From Octopus sinensis (Eukaryota), in assembly GCF_006345805.1 (NCBI RefSeq), contig NC_043001.1, positions 17,236,001 to 17,300,000 of the forward strand: a DNA stretch of 64,000 nt, written 5' to 3'. Both the position numbers and the translations under genes were made by a program. Below are positions 3,970 through 54,824 of the stretch, piece by piece; position 1 is the first letter of the stretch, and each line of letters begins with the position of its first letter. The notes under the pieces were generated by a model that was not told where the DNA came from, searched no databases, and saw only the letters and a list, made by a program, of their open reading frames with translations.

Positions 3970-4390
3970 CTTACTATTTTACTTGTTCAGTCATTTGACT
4001 TGACCATGCTGGAGCACCACCTTTAGTCGAGCAAATCGACCCCAGGACTTATTTTTTGTAAGCCTAGTACTTATTCTATCCGTCTCTTTTGCCGAACCGC
4101 CAAGTTACGGGGACGTAAACACACCAGCATCGGTTGTCAAACAATGTTGGGGTGACAAACACAGACACACAAACATATACACACACAAAGATACATATAC
4201 ATATGCATATACATATATAATATATATACGACGGGATTCTTTCAGTTTCCGTCAACTAAATCCACTCACAAAGCTTTGGTCGGCCCAAGGCTATTGTAGA
4301 AGACACTTGCCCAAGTTACCACGCAGTGGGGCTGAACCCGGAACCATGTGGTTGGTAAGCAAGCTACTTACCACACAGCCACTTCTACGC
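3970..4390 (-). mobile_element. SINE family B copy
   Basis: Same head and tail as 1815-2360. Confidence 0.85.
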
Positions 4391-4401
4391 CTGTATATAT
4401 A

Positions 4402-18083: not shown

Positions 18084-19831
18084 GTTGAGATTTTTTTTTA
18101 ACTCTTTGACACAGTGAAGATATTTCCGCTAAAGGTTTCTAATTCCATCCGAACTCTGTGTACACAGGTTTTGTGACTTTCTTCGGATTTCCTTTTCTTC
18201 TCATTTTTTAGTTTTATTCTGAATACATTTAAAAAAAAAAAAAACCATGGCAACAAAAGAAACCACTGCTTTGGAATGGGAGGTTGTCCCACCCAAGCAG
18301 TGGATTGAAAGTCTTGAGAAGAGGACGGTGGTCCTACGAACCTATTCTAGGTCGCGTGGAGCTATCGCCCTCTTCGACAGGAGCACCATTGAGATGGAGT
18401 TGGGGGACCACCTACCAACGATAAAATTTATTTCTCGGGGGAATAAATTTGCAACGGTGTGGTTGCTATTTGATACCCCCGAGGAAGCTAGCAGATTTGC
18501 TAGCGAGCCACTGGAGGGAGAGGAAATTTTGTTCCTCCTCTCGTATTGTGGCAGAAAAGTAAAAAGAGCCTGGGTGTGTGGGCTGCCCCCGGTTACGGAG
18601 GCGGAATGGATCGAGAAGACCATCCGGCGAGGCCTGGGGGATAGCGGACCCAGACTACTGAGTGTGAAAATGGCTCCCGCGGTCGCCTGGGAGGGGTCAA
18701 AGGCAACTTTGACCCTGTGGACACCGGTGGCCGTGGGAGAAATGAAATTCCAGGATTTCCTGAGAATGGCTGGGCACAGGTACCCGGTGATACTCGAGGG
18801 TCGCCCCCCCAAGTGTCACCTGTGCCTGAAGCCCGGACATATCAGGAAGAATTGTCCCGGGGGGCGTGGTTGTGCCCCGGAGCAGAAAGGGGAAAAGGCG
18901 TCCGCCGCCCCCTCATTGGAGGGGGAGACGGTGGAAGTCGTGGAGGAGGTTGCCTCCACGAAAAGAAAGAGACAGGCGAGCAACAATGGTTGCCCGCCAA
19001 AGAACGCTCAGGTGGCGGAGGGGGATAGCAATCCCCCGTGTCTGGTGACGGAGTCCCCTGGGTCAGCAGTCTCCCCCAAAAGAAGGAGGAGAAAAAGGAG
19101 AGGTCGGACGACTGACGTTTCTGTGTCGCCGACGGAGCCGCGGGTGGGATGTGTGCCACCCGCGGACAAGGCTCCGCCAGTAGGAAGTGTGCCACTGACG
19201 GAGCAGTGTGAGGTCCCTTCCTGTGAAGAGGAGATGCTTTTCCTCCTTTACCACAAGGGAGAGGAGGTGGAAAGATTTTTGAATGGCTTGGGTGACCGAG
19301 AACGCAAGGGCACGGTCGGCTCAAGGAGTCCGTTATGGCCTCCGCGGGTAGCTGCGGAAAAAGTAACGGAAGATATTTTGTCAAGGGTCGCAGAGACCTT
19401 TGAGAGGAAAGATTTTACTTTTCTCTTTGCAGGCCCCGACTTGTCGTCGCAGAGTTGTCTGCAGGCGGCAAGACAATTTGCTTCGGGGACCTGACGAGGA
19501 GAATTGTTGAACATTTTTTAAACATGTTGAAGAGGAGGGTTATTGCCTCCTCTAAAATATGTAATTTGAATCATTATGAACATTTTGAACATTTTTTAAA
19601 CATGTTGAAGAGGAGGTTTATTGCCTCCTCTAAAATATGTAATTTGAATCATTGTGAACATTTTATTAAATGTATTTATTGAAACATTGTTTTAGAGAAG
19701 CGACAGTCGGCGGGCGCTTTTGACTTCTCCCATCACCATCTTCATCCACCACCACCATTATCCATTAATGTCCTTGTCCAGCCCGTAGCTACTACTCTGT
19801 GTGCTGCCCTAGTGGCAAATTATATAAAATA
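18084..19831 (+). mobile_element. ORF1-only Tx1/L1-derived element, copy 1 (5' boundary uncertain)
   Basis: ORF1, then a ~340-bp structured 3'UTR, then AATAAA and the target sequence. No ORF2. Confidence 0.75.
18247..19494 (+). CDS. Gag-like ORF1 protein (415 aa): RRM-like domains, CX2CX4HX4C zinc knuckle, basic low-complexity linker, C-terminal domain
   Basis: Uninterrupted GC-rich ORF with a good ATG context (ACCATGG). Motifs AWVCGLPP..YPVILEGRPPKCHLCLKPGHIRKNCP are typical of Tx1/L1 ORF1 (ZCCHC3-like). Confidence 0.85.
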   Translation: MATKETTALEWEVVPPKQWIESLEKRTVVLRTYSRSRGAIALFDRSTIEMELGDHLPTIKFISRGNKFATVWLLFDTPEEASRFASEPLEGEEILFLLSYCGRKVKRAWVCGLPPVTEAEWIEKTIRRGLGDSGPRLLSVKMAPAVAWEGSKATLTLWTPVAVGEMKFQDFLRMAGHRYPVILEGRPPKCHLCLKPGHIRKNCPGGRGCAPEQKGEKASAAPSLEGETVEVVEEVASTKRKRQASNNGCPPKNAQVAEGDSNPPCLVTESPGSAVSPKRRRRKRRGRTTDVSVSPTEPRVGCVPPADKAPPVGSVPLTEQCEVPSCEEEMLFLLYHKGEEVERFLNGLGDRERKGTVGSRSPLWPPRVAAEKVTEDILSRVAETFERKDFTFLFAGPDLSSQSCLQAARQFASGT

Positions 19832-19846
19832 AAGTAGCTTGCTAAC

Positions 19847-22099
19847 GCACATGCGCAGTTAGTCAGTTGCTTCCTGTTCAGCCAGAGTGGACGAGAGTCA
19901 ACCAGCTCCGTCCAATTAAAGAAAAAAGACCAAAAACGGAAAGTTGTCGAGGTAAGTGATTTTGTTTATTGTGAGTTGGGCATAATTTATTGCGTACCAA
20001 TTATTATTTCAGTAAGTTGTGTCCAACTCTGAGACAATTTCGCCTGCTCTCGGCGGCTGCCGTTTTTGTGTTCATTGAAAAAAAAAAAAAGGAAAAACAG
20101 TGGAGGGGCGTATCCTCAGAATTCAATACAGTTACTGTTAAAATTACCGTTGGCGGTAGCCAGTGCTGTGTTTGGGTTTGTTGAATTTATTCCCTTGTCA
20201 GAGTACTTCGCAAGAAAATTATAAAAATAAGCCACTATTGGATTACCTTTCGGACCCATTTTTGTGGAGGTTGTGTTGCAGTTGCGGCGTTCCAGGTTCA
20301 ACCCAGGCCGGGAGTACCGCAAGGCCAGAATATTTTTGCTGTGTTTTTTCTGTTATTAACTTTCTTTTGAACTTCATTTAACCCCACCTTTTGTTTTTTT
20401 TCTTTATTGCGACTTTCTGTTAATTTCTTCCTTTCTGTTGTGCTTTCTCCTTTTTGTTTTTTCAAAAATCTATCAAATTTTATTTGGACTTTTGAACTTT
20501 TTTCTTCCTGCTTTTTGAGTTTAAATTGAATATATTTAAAAAAAAACATGGCAATGAAAAATAACAAAATTTTGGAGTGGGAAATCATACCACCTAAAAA
20601 GTGGTTAAAAGACCGTGAAGATAGGACGGTGGTGTTGAGAACCTACTCCAAGGCACTAGACACCATCGCCCTATTCGAAAAGACGGCAATTGAAAAGGAG
20701 TTGGAAGAGTATTTGCCAACAATTAAATTCATTTCCAGGGGTGTCAAATATGCAACGGTGTGGTTGCTGTTTGACACCCCTGAAGAGGCTTGCAAATTTG
20801 CTAGCAAACCCCTGGAGGGTAAGGAAATCTTATTCCTGCCCACGTAGAAAAAAAAGAAATTGATGAAAGCTTGGATCTGCGGACTGCCACCCGACATAGA
20901 ACCCGAGTGGATAGAGGAGACTATCCGCCGGGGTCTGGGTGACAGCGAAACTAAGCTCCTCAATGTAAAAGTTCTTCCTGCGGCTGCTTGGGTTGGGTCA
21001 AAAGCAATTTTGACCCTGTGGACCCAATCAGCCAATCTGGTTCTTCCAGATTTTTTGAAAATGGCCGGGTGCAGGTACCCGGTGATGCTTGAGGGTCGCC
21101 CCCCTAAGTGTCATCGGTGCTTGGAGTCCGGCCACATAAAGAACTGTCCTCGGGAACAAAATAGGATCCCGGAACAGTTAAGTAAAACCCCTCTAGAAGA
21201 GGGAACGATAACGGCCGAGAAAGCAGAGGACTCCTCAAACAGAGGCCGAAAGAGGAAGGTGAGCAACAATGGGTGCTCACCAAAGGATAATAGGGATGAG
21301 GAGAGGAAGGCGAAACTTCCAACCACGGAGGAGACGCACCCTCCCTCAGTTGAAAAGGGAAAAAAAAGAAAAAGAGGAAGAAAAACGGGACATTACCGGC
21401 TGTCAGTGTAGCACCGGAATGTCCCGGAACTACGTCGGTTGGGGTTGTGCCACCGACAAGAGAAGAAATACCGTTGGCGGGAACTGTGCCACCAACGAAA
21501 GAACTGAACGTATTGGTCCTCTTCTATAGAGGAGGAGAAATTGAAAAAGTGATGGAAGAGCACTACAAGGGAGCACCTTTAGCCTTCACACAGGACCCCG
21601 AATGGCCTCCGCAGGTAGCTGTGGAGGCCGTGGCGTTCGACGTGACGCTTGGGCTAAAGGAGCTCAATGAAGATTATAACTTGGTCCCGGGCGACGCGAA
21701 CTCGGAACTTGATTACGTTCTGAGGGAAGCGTGGTTGATGGTGGAGGGCGCGGGCACAAGCTATTTCGAGGACGATATGTAATTATTGAACTGTTATTAT
21801 TAGTAATGGACTTAAGTCCAAAAATTGAAAAATTGTAAGAGGATTAATACCTCGTTTTGTATTAATAATGGACTGCTAAGTCCAAAAACTGGAAAAATTG
21901 TAAGAGGTTTAATACCTCGTTTTGTGTTTATCTTTTAAAAAGAACAATGTTTTAGAGAAGCGAAAGTCGGCGGGCGCTTTTTGTCTTCTCCCATCCTTAT
22001 CATCTTTCTTTCATTATCATTCACCTCATTAATGTCCTCGTCCAGCCCGCAAAGCTAACATAATCTGTGTACTGCCTTTATGGCAAATGTTTTGAAATA
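19847..22099 (+). mobile_element. ORF1-only Tx1/L1-derived element, copy 2 (full length, ORF disrupted)
   Basis: Flanked by 15-bp direct repeat AAGTAGCTTGCTAAC (19832-19846 and 22100-22114). It has a 700-bp 5' region, ORF 20548-21782 and the same 3' module as copy 1. Confidence 0.85.
20548..21782 (+). pseudogene. ORF1 of copy 2 (one in-frame TAG at 20845-20847, frameshift near 21.4 kb)
   Basis: Colinear with copy 1: RTVVLRTYS, LPTIKFISRG, ATVWLLFDTPEEA, LEGRPPKCHRCLESGH, WPPQVA. Confidence 0.85.
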
Positions 22100-22470
22100 A
22101 AGTAGCTTGCTAACCAACCACATGGTTCCGGGTTCAGTCCCACTGCGTGGCACCTTGGGCAAGTGTCTTCTGCTATAGCCTCGGGCGGACCAATGCCTTG
22201 TGAGTGGATTTGGTAGACAGAAACTGAAAGAAGCCTGTCGTATATGTGTATATATATATGCATGTGTGTATGTGTTTGTGTGTCTGTATTTGTCCCCCTA
22301 GCATTGCTTGACAACCGATGCTGGTGTGTTTACGTCCCCGTCACTTAGCGGTTCGGCAAAAGAGACCGATGGAATAAGTACTGGGCTTACAAAGAATAAG
22401 TCCCGGGGTCGATTTGCTCGACTAAAGGCGGTGCTCCAGCATGGCCGCAGTCAAGTGACTGAAACTAGTG
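22100..22470 (+). mobile_element. SINE family B remainder (insertion target of copies 1 and 2)
   Basis: Begins exactly at AAGTAGCTTGCTAACCAACCACATGG, inside the tRNA-like head. Confidence 0.9.
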
Positions 22471-45426: not shown

Positions 45427-47080
45427 TATATATTCGACGGGCAAGCTACTTTATTTCAAAAATTTTGCCATAAATTGTATGTTGGATATTGTCTTTACAT
45501 TCGTTGCAATTGGACCATTAACGATGGAATTTTTTTCAGTACAGAATACCGGAAATATCCAGTCTTTGCATAGATAAGGTGGTAAAGAGTAGCTTGCGGG
45601 CTGGACAAAGACATTGATGAGGTGAATGATGATAAGGATGATATTAATGGGAGAAGACAAAAAACGCCCGCCGATTTTTTGCTTCTCTAAAACATTATTC
45701 TCTTCTTTTTTTTCACAGAAAAAAAACAAAACAAGGTATTGAACCTCTTACTTCAGTATTACAATTTTTGGACTAATGGTCCGTTTAAGAATTGGGGCGT
45801 TAAGCCTCTTAAACACAATAACATGCAATAAACATTATAACACTGAGGCTTTTCAACCTCTTGTCATTATTTTTCCCTAACATCGCTTGTGCCCGTACAC
45901 TCCACCCTCGCCCACGCCTCATTCACGACCAAGGCAGGATCCGAGCCGGCGTCGCTCGGCCACAAGTGATATTCCTCATTGAGTCCCTGCAGCCTATACC
46001 CCACAGACACCGTTATGACCGCCATATTCCTCATTGAGTCCCTGCAGCCTATACCCCACAGACACCGTTATGACCGCCAGAGCTATCTGCAGAGGCCATT
46101 CAGGATCCTGTGTGAAGGTTAAAGGTACTCCCTTATGGTGCTTTTCCGTCACCTCTTCTACCTCTCCGCCTCTATAGAAGTTCCTCTTCCTCCGGGTTCG
46201 AGGTAGCCAATTGATTTGGCTTTGTCCCTAAGGACAGTTTTTTCTTTATATGGCCAGGCTCCAGACACCGATGACACCTGGGTAGGTGGGGGCGACCCTC
46301 AAGAATCACCGGGTACCTGCACCCAATTATTTTCAAAAAATCTGACGTAACCAGATCCATGGCTGATTTGGTCCACGGGGTCAAAACAGCAAAAAAGTAT
46401 TTTTGGCATTCAGGTACTCCAAGCCCTAAGGTACTCCAATTACAACCTGGACTGTTCCACTTGAAATACAGGTTTCCAACGTAGTTGTAAAAATACACAC
46501 TATTTACAAACAGGTACTCCAAGCCCTAAGGTACTCCAATTAGAACCTGGTCTGTTCCACTTGAAATACAGGTTCCCAACGTAGTTGTAAAAATACACAG
46601 TATTTACAAACAGCGAACGACTTTTTGGTGGCAGAATACGTCACCAAACTATACTTCCCACAATGAGAAAAAAAATGTCACTTCATGTGAACACTTGAAA
46701 TACAGCTTTCCAATAAAGTTAAATGTTGTTGTAAAAGCATACACTGTTAAAATGTGAACAACCTTTGGTTGAAGGATACGCCCACAAAACTGTACTTCCC
46801 ACAATGAGAAAAAAAATTTCATTTAATATGAACCATATTGCTGAACTGCAAGCAGGCCAACATCCTGAATCCACTGAGGACCCCTTGTTTGTAAAACAAT
46901 ATAAGCACAGACAACGACCCCCACTGGGCCCAAGGGACAAAGTCTTGCTGCAGCTTCTTTTGGCAGGCTAAACACTGCCGGCTATCTTCCTCGGTGCACA
47001 ACACAATGACACATGCGCACACTGACAACAGAGACTCATGGATAAGCAAGCTATTTACCACACAGCCACTCCTGCGCCTA
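44995..47080 (-). mobile_element. SINE family B split by ORF1-only element copy 3
   Basis: Head GGCGCAGGAGTGGCTGTGTGGTAAATAGCTTGC at 47043-47080, tail at 44995-45440. Confidence 0.85.
45451..47042 (-). mobile_element. ORF1-only Tx1/L1-derived element, copy 3 (rearranged)
   Basis: Contains LTPWT..DFLKIIGCRYPVILEGRP..CHRCLEPGHIK and FYRGGEVEEV..TQDPEWPLQIA, the same 3' module as the other copies, and is flanked by A(A/G)TAGCTTGC. Confidence 0.85.
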
Positions 47081-49608: not shown

Positions 49609-50234
49609 TGTGTGTGTATGAATATGTATAACCATAGTTATTGGTCATATATTAAAAGTCCATTGAGATTTTCTGTAGGTATTGTATGAAAATACATCCC
49701 CGATGAGTTTTACAAATATTAACAGTTTACTGTACCAGCTGCACTCATTTCGTTATTCAAAATTTTTAGCGGTGTTTTGTTTGAAATTCATGGCATTCAG
49801 GTTTTATTTACACAGAGTTGTTTCTTTTATGTAAATAAATGTATCTATAGCAAACAAATATCTCTTTGGCCTCCTGCTGATAAAATATATGTCTATGTTT
49901 TTTTATATGCGTCCATGTCACTGAAAATAGTTATACACGGAATAAAAACAAGTTTGATTTATGTTCACTTCATATACATATGTACATAGCGTAGCCTACT
50001 GTTTAGGATGGTGCACTCACCATTACACGGACCAGGTGGGCGCCGTATTTTTAAAGTAAATCAGTTCATCTCACGCAACTCTGCAATCATTTCAACATCT
50101 GACGTATTGTACAGCGTGCGCCTGTACTGGCAATGTCAGTTCGTTGAAGAGAATGATGTAATGTTTAGTACAAGCATTTAATCATTATAAAAGAAAATCC
50201 CTGTGCAGGCTGATCAGCAAGAAATTGTAGATCC

Positions 50235-50785
50235 ATCGGGCAAGAAGATTGTATTTTTGATTCCTAAAAGGACTTCTGTAAGAGGTTTATTGCCTCAAAA
50301 TGGCTTTGCATGTCATTAATGTAAGAGGACTATTGCCCTCTTAATGTGTTACTGTGTAAGAGGTTTGTTGCCTTAAAATGTTTTATAAAAAAACAATGTG
50401 CTCGGATATACAGCAATCGGCAGGCGTTGCTGTTGCCCTCATTATTATCATACCTATTTCTTTACTACCCACAAGGAGCTAAACACAGAGAGGACAAACA
50501 AGGACAGACAAACGGATTAAGTCGATTATATCGACTCCAGTGCGTAACTGGTACTTATTTAATCGACCCCGAAAGGATGAAAAGCAAAGTCGACCTCGGC
50601 GGAATTTGAACTCAAAAATTAGCGGCAGACAAAATACCGCTAAGCATTTTGCCCGTCGTCCTAACGCTTCTGCCAACTCGCCGCCTCATTATTTTCATAT
50701 CCTTAATCATTCCATCTCATTATGTCCGTGTCCAGCCCGCAGCTTCTTTTCTTTGTAAGGCCCTTGTGGTCAATTAGATGAATAA
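50235..50785 (+). mobile_element. ORF1-only family copy 4 (3'UTR only, 5'-truncated) with a nested SINE C at 50453-50684
   Basis: 16-bp TSD AAGAAATTGTAGATCC (50219-50234 and 50786-50801). It has GAGG..CCTC hairpins, the TCGGCAGGCG loop and GTCCAGCCCGC. The nested SINE has TSD CTCATTATTWTCATA. Confidence 0.75.
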
Positions 50786-50939
50786 AAGAAATTGTAGATC
50801 CCTCATCACTTGCCTACGACAGATGAAGGTTTTAAGCACAAACACATATACAGTGCAATTTGAATTTAAAAGGCAATGGAATTTTGAAATTCATGAGTAT
50901 TCCCCTACAGTTGAAAGGAAACCACATAGTGGAACCCTA

Positions 50940-52640: not shown

Positions 52641-52702
52641 TATATATATATATAATGTATATTATTAATAATAATGTATATGTACACAACTACATTCACA
52701 TG

Positions 52703-52779
<77 letters not shown>

Positions 52780-52788
52780 AATAATAGA

Positions 52789-54824
<2,036 letters not shown>

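What the first reader, a model, noticed from the sequence alone, without database searches (positions are those of the whole stretch)
19695..19793. Conserved 3'UTR hairpin with covariation and a predicted loop-to-downstream pseudoknot
Seen in four copies: a stem around a conserved loop TCGGCGGGCG. Inner stems are CGACAG/CTTTTG (copy 1), CGAAAG/CTTTTTG (copy 2, 21955-21990), CAAAAAA/TTTTTTG (copy 3) and ACAGCAA/TTGCTGT (copy 4, 50410-50433), so the sequence changes while pairing is kept. Copies 1-3 add an outer GAGAAG/CTTCTC stem. The loop hexamer GCGGGC is complementary to the conserved GCCCG(C/T) about 60 nt downstream (GTCCAGCCCG), across a variable CAT-rich linker. Copy 4 has one loop mismatch. 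Inference: a selected RNA tertiary structure, possibly an RT-recognition element, nuclease block or ribozyme. It matches no hammerhead, HDV or twister consensus that I can confirm.
Basis: partly seen in the sequence, partly recalled or inferred. Interest (0 to 1): 0.78.

Follow-up and report, generated by a model that had tools for sequence, protein, structure and literature searches.

The report
Conserved 3'UTR hairpin, octopus ORF1-like repeat
A small RNA hairpin with a fixed G-rich tip and a changeable but always-paired stem really is conserved in the tail of four copies of an octopus gene family derived from a jumping-gene (LINE) RNA-binding protein; it is most likely a protein docking site, and the proposed extra fold (pseudoknot) and ribozyme ideas have no support.

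Summary
Four copies in the window carry TCGGCGGGCG (one mismatch in copy 4) between complementary arms. Five of nine pairs change on both sides while staying paired, so this is a selected RNA hairpin on the sense strand.

It lies in a roughly 160-nt conserved 3'-terminal UTR module of an octopod-restricted family. The ORF encodes two RRM folds plus a CCHC knuckle, and distant homologues are LINE ORF1 genes placed directly upstream of endonuclease/RT ORFs. The window copies have no ORF2. Copies 1 and 2 are old tandem duplicates: dN/dS is 0.1-0.3 and silent sites are near saturation, yet the 3' module is 76% identical. Copy 4 is a 5'-truncated retrocopy with a 15-16-nt target-site duplication.

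Best reading: a protein-recognition stem-loop, with the loop read by sequence and the stem by shape, for the family's own ORF1p-like protein and/or a LINE reverse transcriptase.

The loop-to-GCCCG pseudoknot is possible but unsupported. It shows no covariation, its one variant breaks a pair, and its complementarity is weak against shuffles. No ribozyme or other Rfam family matches. The evidence rests on four copies from about two lineages; no further copies could be retrieved.

The parts
18247..19494 (+). Copy 1 ORF, intact, 415 aa: two RRM-like domains, a CCHC knuckle (CHLCLKPGHIRKNC), a basic linker and a C-terminal helical region.
   Evidence: ORF list. AlphaFold2 pLDDT is about 90 for residues 10-205. 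Foldseek matches tandem-RRM proteins such as UP1/hnRNP A1, U2AF65 and IMP3. Pfam zf-CCHC is weak, E = 0.034. hhalign to P0067, a LINE ORF1, gives 96.9% probability and E = 1.9e-10.
19495..19833 (+). Copy 1 3'UTR, ending at AATAAA (19828-19833). The conserved 3'-terminal module runs from about 19683 to 19846.
   Evidence: The module is 76-79% identical to copy 2, while silent-site differences in the ORF are 63-70%.
19695..19729 (+). Copy 1 hairpin: outer stem 19695-19700 / 19724-19729, inner stem 19701-19706 / 19717-19722, loop 19707-19716.
19776..19786 (+). Copy 1 conserved box GTCCAGCCCGT. GCCCGT (19781-19786) is complementary to loop GCGGGC (19710-19715).
20548..21782 (+). Copy 2 ORF, with two frame disruptions (pseudogene or sequencing error). 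It lies in tandem with copy 1.
21955..21990 (+). Copy 2 hairpin, loop 21967-21976.
22040..22050 (+). Copy 2 GTCCAGCCCGC box.
45651..45687 (-). Copy 3 hairpin, loop 45665-45674. The copy 3 ORF is fragmentary (about 45885-46390) and starts at residue ~148.
45597..45606 (-). Copy 3 GTCCAGCCCG box.
50235..50786 (+). Copy 4: a 5'-truncated retrocopy containing UTR only and ending at AATAAA. It is interrupted by another repeat at 50453-50684.
   Evidence: It is flanked by the exact duplication AGAAATTGTAGATCC at 50220-50234 and 50787-50801.
50410..50433 (+). Copy 4 hairpin ACAGCAA-TCGGCAGGCG-TTGCTGT: a perfect 7-bp stem of different sequence, with no outer stem.
50730..50739 (+). Copy 4 GTCCAGCCCG box.

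Best explanation
The feature is a genuine, selected RNA stem-loop on the sense strand. It has a G-rich apical loop: U, then C-G and G-C closing pairs, then a GCGGG pentaloop. The stem is A/U-rich, and its sequence drifts while pairing is kept.

The hairpin is one of several conserved elements in a roughly 160-nt 3'-terminal UTR module. The module belongs to an octopod-restricted family whose ORF is a LINE ORF1p homologue (two RRMs plus one CCHC knuckle) with no ORF2.

Inferred mechanism: the hairpin is a protein-recognition site that marks the transcript for assembly into a retroelement-type RNP. The loop is read by sequence and the stem by shape.

Shown: the hairpin, its covariation, conservation of the module above the silent-site level, the ORF1p homology and fold, and one retroposed copy.
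Inferred: which protein binds, and that binding serves RNP formation or retroposition.

The loop-to-GCCCG pairing is optional in this model and unproven. The element is not a known ribozyme.
For: Hairpin:
- All four copies give the same fold.
- Five of 9 pairs change on both sides. These include G-C (copies 1, 2) against A-U (copies 3, 4) at the loop-proximal pair, and four double changes in copy 4 relative to copy 3.
- Slide and shuffle controls score far lower, and the neutral simulation gives p of about 1e-5 to 1e-4.
- The G.U pairs in copies 1 and 2 would be C.A mismatches on the other strand, and the antisense folds of those copies are weaker.

Module under constraint:
- Copies 1 and 2 differ at 63-70% of silent sites (dS 1.4-2.1), with dN/dS 0.09-0.27.
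- Even so, the 3' module is 76% identical outside the hairpin.
- Between copies 2 and 3 the module is the best-conserved part of the unit, 88% against 66-80% elsewhere.

Carrier is ORF1p-like:
- The predicted structure has a tandem-RRM fold, and a CCHC motif is present.
- The profile search finds 72 relatives. All of the named ones looked up are from octopods (Octopus bimaculoides, O. vulgaris, O. sinensis, Argonauta hians).
- P0067 aligns over both RRMs and the knuckle (hhalign 96.9%, E = 1.9e-10). Its gene is followed at once by an Exo_endo_phos ORF.
- P0079 shares the strand-plus-knuckle motif and precedes an APE+RT ORF2 in a 5.2-kb contig.

Retroposition: copy 4 is UTR-only, ends at AATAAA and has a 15-16-nt target-site duplication.

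Literature: stringent LINE ORF2 proteins bind the 3'-tail stem-loop in two parts, the stem generally and the loop specifically (PMC4176376). A conserved 3' hairpin is required for UnaL2 mobilisation (PMC1636434).
Against: - There are only four copies. Copies 1-3 share a junction to the same truncated SINE-like repeat, so they descend from one genomic ancestor. The covariation therefore rests on about two or three lineages.
- No LINE or SINE carrying the same tail was found. The model hits nothing else in the window, in 20 kb of O. sinensis, or in the two LINE contigs.
- The hairpin lies about 100-125 nt from the 3' end, further in than the UnaL2/ZfL2 stem-loops. A smaller hairpin (TGCC/GGCA) lies closer to the end.
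- Copies 1 and 2 evolved under purifying selection in place as tandem duplicates. That fits a host gene family with an ordinary regulatory UTR as well as it fits a mobile element.
- Gene conversion between tandem copies could inflate UTR identity.
- No expression or binding data exist.
Confidence: 0.5

Rival explanations
1. It is an ordinary post-transcriptional control element (stability, localisation or translation) of a domesticated ORF1p-derived host gene family. Host RNA-binding proteins bind it, and it has no role in retroposition. Copy 4 is then just an occasional processed retrocopy.
For: - Copies 1 and 2 are tandem duplicates that share a flank junction.
- They diverged under purifying selection (dN/dS 0.09-0.27) with silent sites near saturation, as retained host paralogues do.
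- No ORF2 is present anywhere in the units.
- The family is small in the protein databases.
- The UTR holds several different conserved hairpins, as regulated mRNAs do.
- A precedent for ORF1 domestication exists: L1TD1 (PMC4161310).
Against: - Three of the four copies are broken or truncated.
- Copy 4 ends exactly at AATAAA, with no room for a cleavage site and no A-tail, yet has a clean target-site duplication. This looks more like priming at a defined element end than like a typical polyadenylated retrocopy.
- Nothing identifies a host factor.
Confidence: 0.25
2. The hairpin loop GCGGGC pairs with the downstream GCCCG(C/T) across the CAT-rich linker. The result is a pseudoknotted tertiary domain, which is the functional unit.
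For: - The six-nucleotide complementarity is present in copies 1-3, with G.U in copy 1.
- Both boxes are invariant islands of G+C in an A/U/C-rich, G-poor stretch.
- RNAalifold picks this helix on the MAFFT alignment.
- Duplex energy is -12.8 to -14.5 kcal/mol.
- Both boxes are conserved well above the silent-site level.
Against: - There is no compensatory change. Four of six pairs never vary, and the one loop substitution (copy 4, G to A) gives an uncompensated A.C.
- Shuffled C-rich tails match the observed energy in 2-11% of trials, and in 70% for copy 4.
- The conserved box is longer than the paired part (at least 10 nt, GTCCAGCCCG), so its conservation needs another explanation anyway.
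- Forming the helix means opening the two C-G/G-C pairs that close the pentaloop.
Confidence: 0.12
3. It has no RNA function. It is a relic palindrome, for example from templated quasi-palindrome correction, and its similarity among copies is kept up by gene conversion or recent duplication.
For: - Copies 1-3 descend from one ancestor, and tandem copies can exchange sequence.
- Single-copy folding energies are unremarkable.
- The sample is only four copies.
Against: - Silent sites between copies 1 and 2 are near saturation, so the duplication is old.
- Copy 4 comes from a separate source. It lacks the SINE junction and is about 65% identical outside the hairpin, yet it keeps the loop at 9 of 10 positions and has a perfect stem of different sequence.
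- G.U pairs point to RNA, not DNA.
Confidence: 0.08
4. It is a self-cleaving ribozyme or an exonuclease-resistant block.
For: Only that some retroelements carry ribozymes (my own background knowledge) and that the region is structured.
Against: - No Rfam family reaches its gathering score in the 64-kb window.
- With permissive settings on 19450-19900, no ribozyme or xrRNA family appears. The hits are chance miRNA and sRNA models with E of at least 0.05, and they lie outside the hairpin.
- The conserved core is a simple hairpin plus linear boxes, with no multi-helix junction.
Confidence: 0.03

Closest known systems
3'-tail stem-loops of stringent-type LINEs and their SINE partners (eel UnaL2, zebrafish ZfL2-1/-2; PMC1636434, PMC4176376)
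   Same: - Both are hairpins in the 3' untranslated tail of a non-LTR retroelement-type transcript.
- Both have a conserved loop sequence and a stem kept by pairing, which fits the two-part recognition of stem and loop described for ZfL2 ORF2p.
- Bulges and mismatches occur in the stem.
- The RNA is retroposed from its 3' end (copy 4).
   Different: - There is no sequence similarity.
- The carrier has no ORF2/RT of its own.
- The hairpin lies about 100-125 nt from the end rather than in the terminal ~60 nt.
- The unit ends in AATAAA, not in short tandem repeats.
- No partner LINE or SINE with the same tail was found here.
ORF1-only LINE derivatives: HAL1 (half-L1) elements and the domesticated L1TD1 gene (PMC4161310)
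   Same: A LINE ORF1p-homologous ORF stands alone without ORF2. It persists under purifying selection, and at least one copy was retroposed in trans.
   Different: - The protein is of the RRM + CCHC type, not the L1 coiled-coil/RRM/CTD type.
- The family is restricted to octopods.
- A conserved structured 3'UTR module is its prominent feature, which is not a described hallmark of HAL1 or L1TD1.
Retroviral packaging-signal stem-loops with exposed G-rich loops, bound by CCHC nucleocapsid knuckles (HIV-1 psi SL2/SL3; my own background knowledge, not tested here)
   Same: A G-rich apical loop is displayed on a stem, and the same transcript encodes a CCHC zinc-knuckle RNA-binding protein.
   Different: - It lies in the 3'UTR rather than the 5' leader.
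- The protein has a single knuckle plus two RRMs.
- No binding data exist and no homology is implied.
Hairpin-loop-to-single-strand (H-type) pseudoknots
   Same: Six loop nucleotides are complementary to a conserved downstream box.
   Different: The linker is 60-70 nt and variable. The second helix has no covariation, and the one variant disrupts it.

Membership tests
LINE ORF1p (RRM + CCHC type) | RNA-recognition-motif fold(s) | tested here: met
   AlphaFold2 gives pLDDT of about 90 for residues 10-205. Foldseek gives E = 3e-5 to 1e-3 against tandem-RRM structures.
LINE ORF1p (RRM + CCHC type) | CCHC zinc knuckle C-terminal to the RRMs | tested here: met
   A C-x2-C-x4-H-x4-C motif is present at residues 191-204. 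The Pfam zf-CCHC match is below the curated cut-off (14.7 bits against 20.8). The motif is invariant in the family alignment.
LINE ORF1p (RRM + CCHC type) | Homology to ORF1 proteins located upstream of an APE/RT ORF2 | tested here: met
   P0067 gives hhalign 96.9%, E = 1.9e-10 over 182 columns, and its gene is followed by an Exo_endo_phos ORF. P0079 precedes an Exo_endo_phos + RVT_1 ORF, but its similarity is limited to 34 residues.
Autonomous LINE | ORF2 with endonuclease and reverse transcriptase in the same unit | tested here: not met
   In copies 1-3 the ORF is followed by a ~340-nt UTR and AATAAA. The only RT fragment in the window (52655-54513) is unrelated and has a different tail.
Non-LTR retroposed element | 5' truncation and target-site duplication | tested here: met
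   This holds for copy 4 only: an exact 15-16-nt duplication flanks a UTR-only copy. Copies 1-3 look like DNA-level duplicates.
Stringent-type LINE 3'-tail recognition stem-loop | Stem-loop with conserved loop and covarying stem in the 3' tail | tested here: met
Stringent-type LINE 3'-tail recognition stem-loop | Same tail shared by an autonomous LINE and/or a SINE partner | tested here: not met
   The covariance model finds only the four family copies in the window. It finds none in L001, L122, L123 or L124. Octopod repeat libraries could not be searched.
Stringent-type LINE 3'-tail recognition stem-loop | Required for retrotransposition or bound by ORF2p | not testable with these tools
   This needs a retrotransposition assay or a binding assay.
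RNA pseudoknot (loop to downstream box) | Second helix supported by covariation or probing | tested here: inconclusive
   No pair changes on both sides, one pair is G.U and one is broken. Energy against shuffles gives p = 0.02-0.70.
Self-cleaving ribozymes (hammerhead, HDV-like, twister and others) or any Rfam family | Match to the family covariance model | tested here: not met
   There are no hits at gathering thresholds in the window, and no ribozyme model at E <= 10 on 19450-19900.

The most novel reading that the evidence does not exclude
The hairpin loop and the GTCCAGCCCG box form a real long-range pseudoknotted 3' domain. This domain acts as a self-recognition (packaging) signal for a domesticated, ORF1p-derived RRM-CCHC protein family specific to octopods. 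That would make it a LINE-derived counterpart of the Arc/PEG10-type proteins that bind their own mRNAs, maintained by selection in tandem host genes.
Probability: 0.08. Interest if true: 0.65.

Novelty: new member of a known kind. Interest (0 to 1): 0.36.

Why it matters
If the reading holds, this is an undescribed cis-acting RNA element that is absent from Rfam. It marks a cephalopod-specific family of LINE ORF1p-derived RNA-binding proteins.

It would provide a concrete handle, a 35-nt hairpin with a defined loop, for two questions. The first is how ORF1-only units are recognised and mobilised, or alternatively regulated as host genes. The second is how retroelement RNPs choose their RNA in octopods, animals whose retrotransposon activity in the brain is under active study (PMC9115989).

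It is not a new kind of RNA machine. The tertiary-fold and ribozyme ideas that earned the finding a high first-stage score are not supported.

Tried and rejected
1. More copies through proteins. Three word-indexed protein searches, using the single ORF and then alignments of 4 and of 30 sequences, returned only a 3'-truncated O. sinensis copy (P0001) and two distant LINE ORF1s. The DNA of the O. sinensis copy (L001) lacks the UTR module. The 72 relatives from the exhaustive profile search could not be traced to DNA, because the contig look-up accepts only proteins returned by the other search. I did not try to get round that rule.

2. Pattern scans.
- The metagenome scan with GAGAAGC-N5-8-TCGGCGGGCG gave at least 120 hits. 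None carries the 3' arm, so they are chance matches in G+C-rich DNA.
- The full hairpin pattern gave one chance hit in a Burkholderiales MAG among prokaryotic genomes, and none in viral contigs.

3. Rfam at gathering and at permissive thresholds found nothing relevant.

4. The LINE RT fragment in the window (52655-54513) was considered as a possible partner. Its 3'UTR is unrelated and ends in (AAT)n.

5. RNAalifold on a MAFFT alignment missed the hairpin, because the arms were misaligned, and chose the long-range helix instead. I therefore counted pairs on an alignment of the inner hairpin alone.

6. A target-site duplication for copy 3 was not found, because microsatellites obscure the flank.

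7. ARAGORN does not call the flanking SINE-like repeat a tRNA, so I make no claim of tRNA origin.
Full report
**What is in the sequence**

The window is repeat-rich animal DNA. The only close protein match of the local ORF is an Octopus sinensis protein at 60% identity. More distant relatives are all from octopods: O. bimaculoides, O. vulgaris, O. sinensis and Argonauta hians.

The decamer TCGGCGGGCG occurs at 19707, 21967 and 45674 (minus strand). It occurs with one mismatch (TCGGCAGGCG) at 50417. That is four matches against 0.43 expected.

| Copy | 5' side | 3' side |
|---|---|---|
| 1 | GAGAAG-CGACAG | CTTTTG-A-CTTCTC |
| 2 | GAGAAG-CGAAAG | CTTTTTG-T-CTTCTC |
| 3 | GAGAAG-CAAAAAA | TTTTTTG-T-CTTCTC |
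| 4 | ACAGCAA | TTGCTGT |

The box GTCCAGCCCG follows about 60 nt later in copies 1-3. In copy 4 it follows about 300 nt later, because another repeat with its own ~15-nt duplication sits at 50453-50684.

**Is the hairpin real?**

All four copies fold into the same hairpin. The fold also closes the nominal 10-nt loop with C-G and G-C pairs, leaving a bulged U and a GCGGG pentaloop. Single-copy energies are not remarkable against shuffles (z -0.1 to -2.8), so the argument has to be comparative.

I counted pairs on an alignment of the inner hairpin:
- 93.9% of cells are paired.
- Five of nine pairs change on both sides.
- The covariation score is 0.481, against 0.289 for shuffles (7 of 500 reach it).
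- Sliding the partners by 1-3 columns gives at most 0.167 and 0-1 such pairs.
- The loop-proximal pair is G-C in copies 1 and 2 and A-U in copies 3 and 4.
- Copy 4 differs from copy 3 by four double substitutions and is still a perfect 7-bp helix.

Outside the hairpin, copy 4 is only about 65% identical to the others. A neutral simulation at that divergence keeps all seven pairs in 1-3% of runs. It does so with at least four double changes in 1e-5 to 1e-4 of runs.

Copies 1 and 2 contain G.U pairs, which would be C.A on the other strand, and their antisense folds are weaker. The structure is therefore an RNA hairpin on the sense strand.

The outer GAGAAG/CTTCTC stem is invariant in copies 1-3 and lost in copy 4, so it carries no comparative information. 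A covariance model of the four copies finds no fifth copy in the window.

**What carries it**

The hairpin lies about 200 nt after the stop of a 415-aa ORF (18247-19494) and about 100 nt before AATAAA (19828-19833).

The copies compare as follows:
- Copy 2 (ORF 20548-21782, two frame breaks) follows head-to-tail.
- Copy 3 is inverted and starts at residue ~148.
- Copy 4 has no ORF.

The predicted protein structure has two confident RRM-like domains. Foldseek matches UP1/hnRNP A1, U2AF65 and IMP3 RRM1-2. A CCHC knuckle follows the RRMs.

An exhaustive profile search finds 72 relatives. Two that could be traced to DNA are LINE ORF1 genes:
- P0067 aligns over both RRMs and the knuckle (hhalign 96.9%, E = 1.9e-10). 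An Exo_endo_phos ORF follows it immediately.
- P0079 shares the strand-plus-knuckle motif. It precedes an endonuclease + RT ORF2 in a 5.2-kb contig.

The family is therefore LINE ORF1p-derived, but its units have no ORF2.

**Mobile element or host gene?**

Both signals are present.

Copy 4 is a textbook target-primed retrocopy. It is UTR-only, ends at AATAAA, and is flanked by the exact duplication AGAAATTGTAGATCC at 50220-50234 and 50787-50801.

Copies 1-3 instead share the junction AATAAA|GTAGCTTGC with a 5'-truncated SINE-like repeat, whose full copy is at 4393-4215. They therefore descend from one genomic ancestor.

Copies 1 and 2 and the O. sinensis paralogue differ at 48-71% of silent sites, with dN/dS 0.09-0.31. 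This points to long-term purifying selection on the protein.

Against that near-saturated background, the last ~160 nt of the UTR are well conserved:
- 76% identical between copies 1 and 2.
- 88% identical between copies 2 and 3.
- They are the best-conserved part of the unit between copies 2 and 3.

The whole 3' module is therefore constrained, not only the hairpin. Gene conversion between the tandem copies could contribute to this identity. It cannot explain the compensatory changes or copy 4.

**The pseudoknot**

Loop GCGGGC is complementary to GCCCG(C/T) in copies 1-3, and RNAalifold will draw that helix. The evidence for it is weak:
- Four of six pairs never vary. One is G-C to G.U. The only loop substitution (copy 4) makes an uncompensated A.C.
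- Shuffled tails, which are C-rich, reach the observed duplex energy in 11%, 4%, 2% and 70% of trials.
- The conserved box is longer than the paired part.
- Forming the helix requires opening the pairs that close the pentaloop.

The pairing is sterically possible and is not refuted. Nothing here favours it over two separately conserved protein-binding boxes.

**Ribozyme or known RNA family**

No Rfam family reaches its gathering score anywhere in the window. A permissive scan of 19450-19900 gives only chance miRNA and sRNA hits outside the hairpin.

**Mechanism I commit to**

The hairpin is a protein-recognition stem-loop that helps load this transcript into a retroelement-type RNP. The conserved G-rich loop is read by sequence and the stem by shape.

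This is the pattern shown experimentally for stringent LINE tails: ZfL2 ORF2p recognises the stem generally and the loop specifically (PMC4176376), and the UnaL2 hairpin is required for mobilisation (PMC1636434). From general knowledge, CCHC knuckles favour exposed guanines in loops.

Confidence that the hairpin is a selected RNA structure is about 0.85. Confidence that it serves RNP or retroposition recognition rather than ordinary mRNA regulation is about 0.5 to 0.6 of that.

The main rival is a regulatory UTR element of a domesticated ORF1-derived gene family, by analogy with L1TD1 (PMC4161310). The tandem, selected copies favour that rival.

**Limits**

- There are only four copies, from about two or three independent lineages.
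- No further octopod DNA could be retrieved with the tools.
- No partner LINE or SINE with the same tail was identified.
- There are no expression or probing data.

**Verdict**

The pseudoknot and ribozyme ideas are not supported. The feature is a new instance of a known kind of element, a retroelement 3'-tail stem-loop, on an unusual ORF1-only carrier. It is of moderate interest.

Noticed in passing
window 19507-19664; also 21833-21858, 21898-21923, 45740-45870 (-), 50276-50390: The upstream half of each UTR carries 2-3 copies of a second small hairpin motif, (T/G)AAGAGG-N7-CCTC. There are 10 instances in the 4 UTRs, some with extended stems. In copy 1 it sits in a 78-nt tandem duplication that is 97.5% identical (19507-19586 / 19585-19664).
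   Followed up: partly
window 21808-21819, 21870-21883; copy 3 around 45775-45790 (-): GGAC-loop-GTCC hairpins (GGACTTAAGTCC, GGACTGCTAAGTCC, GGACCATTAGTCC) alternate with the TAAGAGG hairpins. The UTR therefore looks like an array of two-hairpin units.
   Followed up: no
window 19805-19817, 22073-22085, 50759-50771: A 4-bp hairpin TGCC-N5-GGCA lies about 10 nt before AATAAA. Copy 4 has GGCC/GGTC, which is a U-A to G-C compensatory change plus a G.U pair. It lies closer to the 3' end than the main hairpin and could be the priming-proximal element.
   Followed up: partly
window 19787-19793 with 19833-19839 (and equivalents in copies 2, 3): AGCTAC(T), just after the GCCCG box, is complementary to (A)GTAGCT, just after AATAAA. 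RNAalifold draws a helix that brackets the poly(A) signal. The 3' partner is part of the SINE-like flank.
   Followed up: no
window 19834-19846, 22102-22260, 45440-45425 (-); full repeat 4215-4393 (-): Copies 1-3 all continue after AATAAA into the same SINE-like repeat. The repeat lacks its first ~22 nt and starts at GTAGCTTGC. Copy 2 keeps most of it, copy 3 keeps its two ends, and copy 1 keeps 13 nt. This shows that copies 1-3 are DNA-level duplicates of one ancestral locus. ARAGORN finds no tRNA in it.
   Followed up: partly
window 50220-50234 and 50787-50801; 50437-50452 and 50684-50699: There are two nested target-site duplications. One, AGAAATTGTAGATCC, flanks the copy 4 retrocopy. The other, C(C)TCATTATT(A/T)TCATA, flanks a later ~235-nt repeat inserted into its CAT-rich linker.
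   Followed up: yes
window 52655-54513 (+), tail to about 54836: This is an unrelated LINE fragment with RVT_1 and zf-RVT matches in two adjacent ORFs. Its 3'UTR ends in a long (AAT)n run. It has no similarity to the hairpin module.
   Followed up: partly
window 19847-20547: Between copies 1 and 2 there is a possible 5' exon of copy 2 with a GTAAGT donor at 19954. A pyrimidine tract plus AG acceptor lies near 20518, and copy 1 has a similar tract before 18212. If real, the units are intron-containing genes rather than retrocopies.
   Followed up: no
window 18247-19494 vs 20548-21408 and L001 10001-10843: The ORF is under purifying selection (dN/dS 0.09-0.31) with silent sites near saturation (pS 0.48-0.71). 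The O. sinensis relative is 3'-truncated at a microsatellite and lacks the UTR module.
   Followed up: yes
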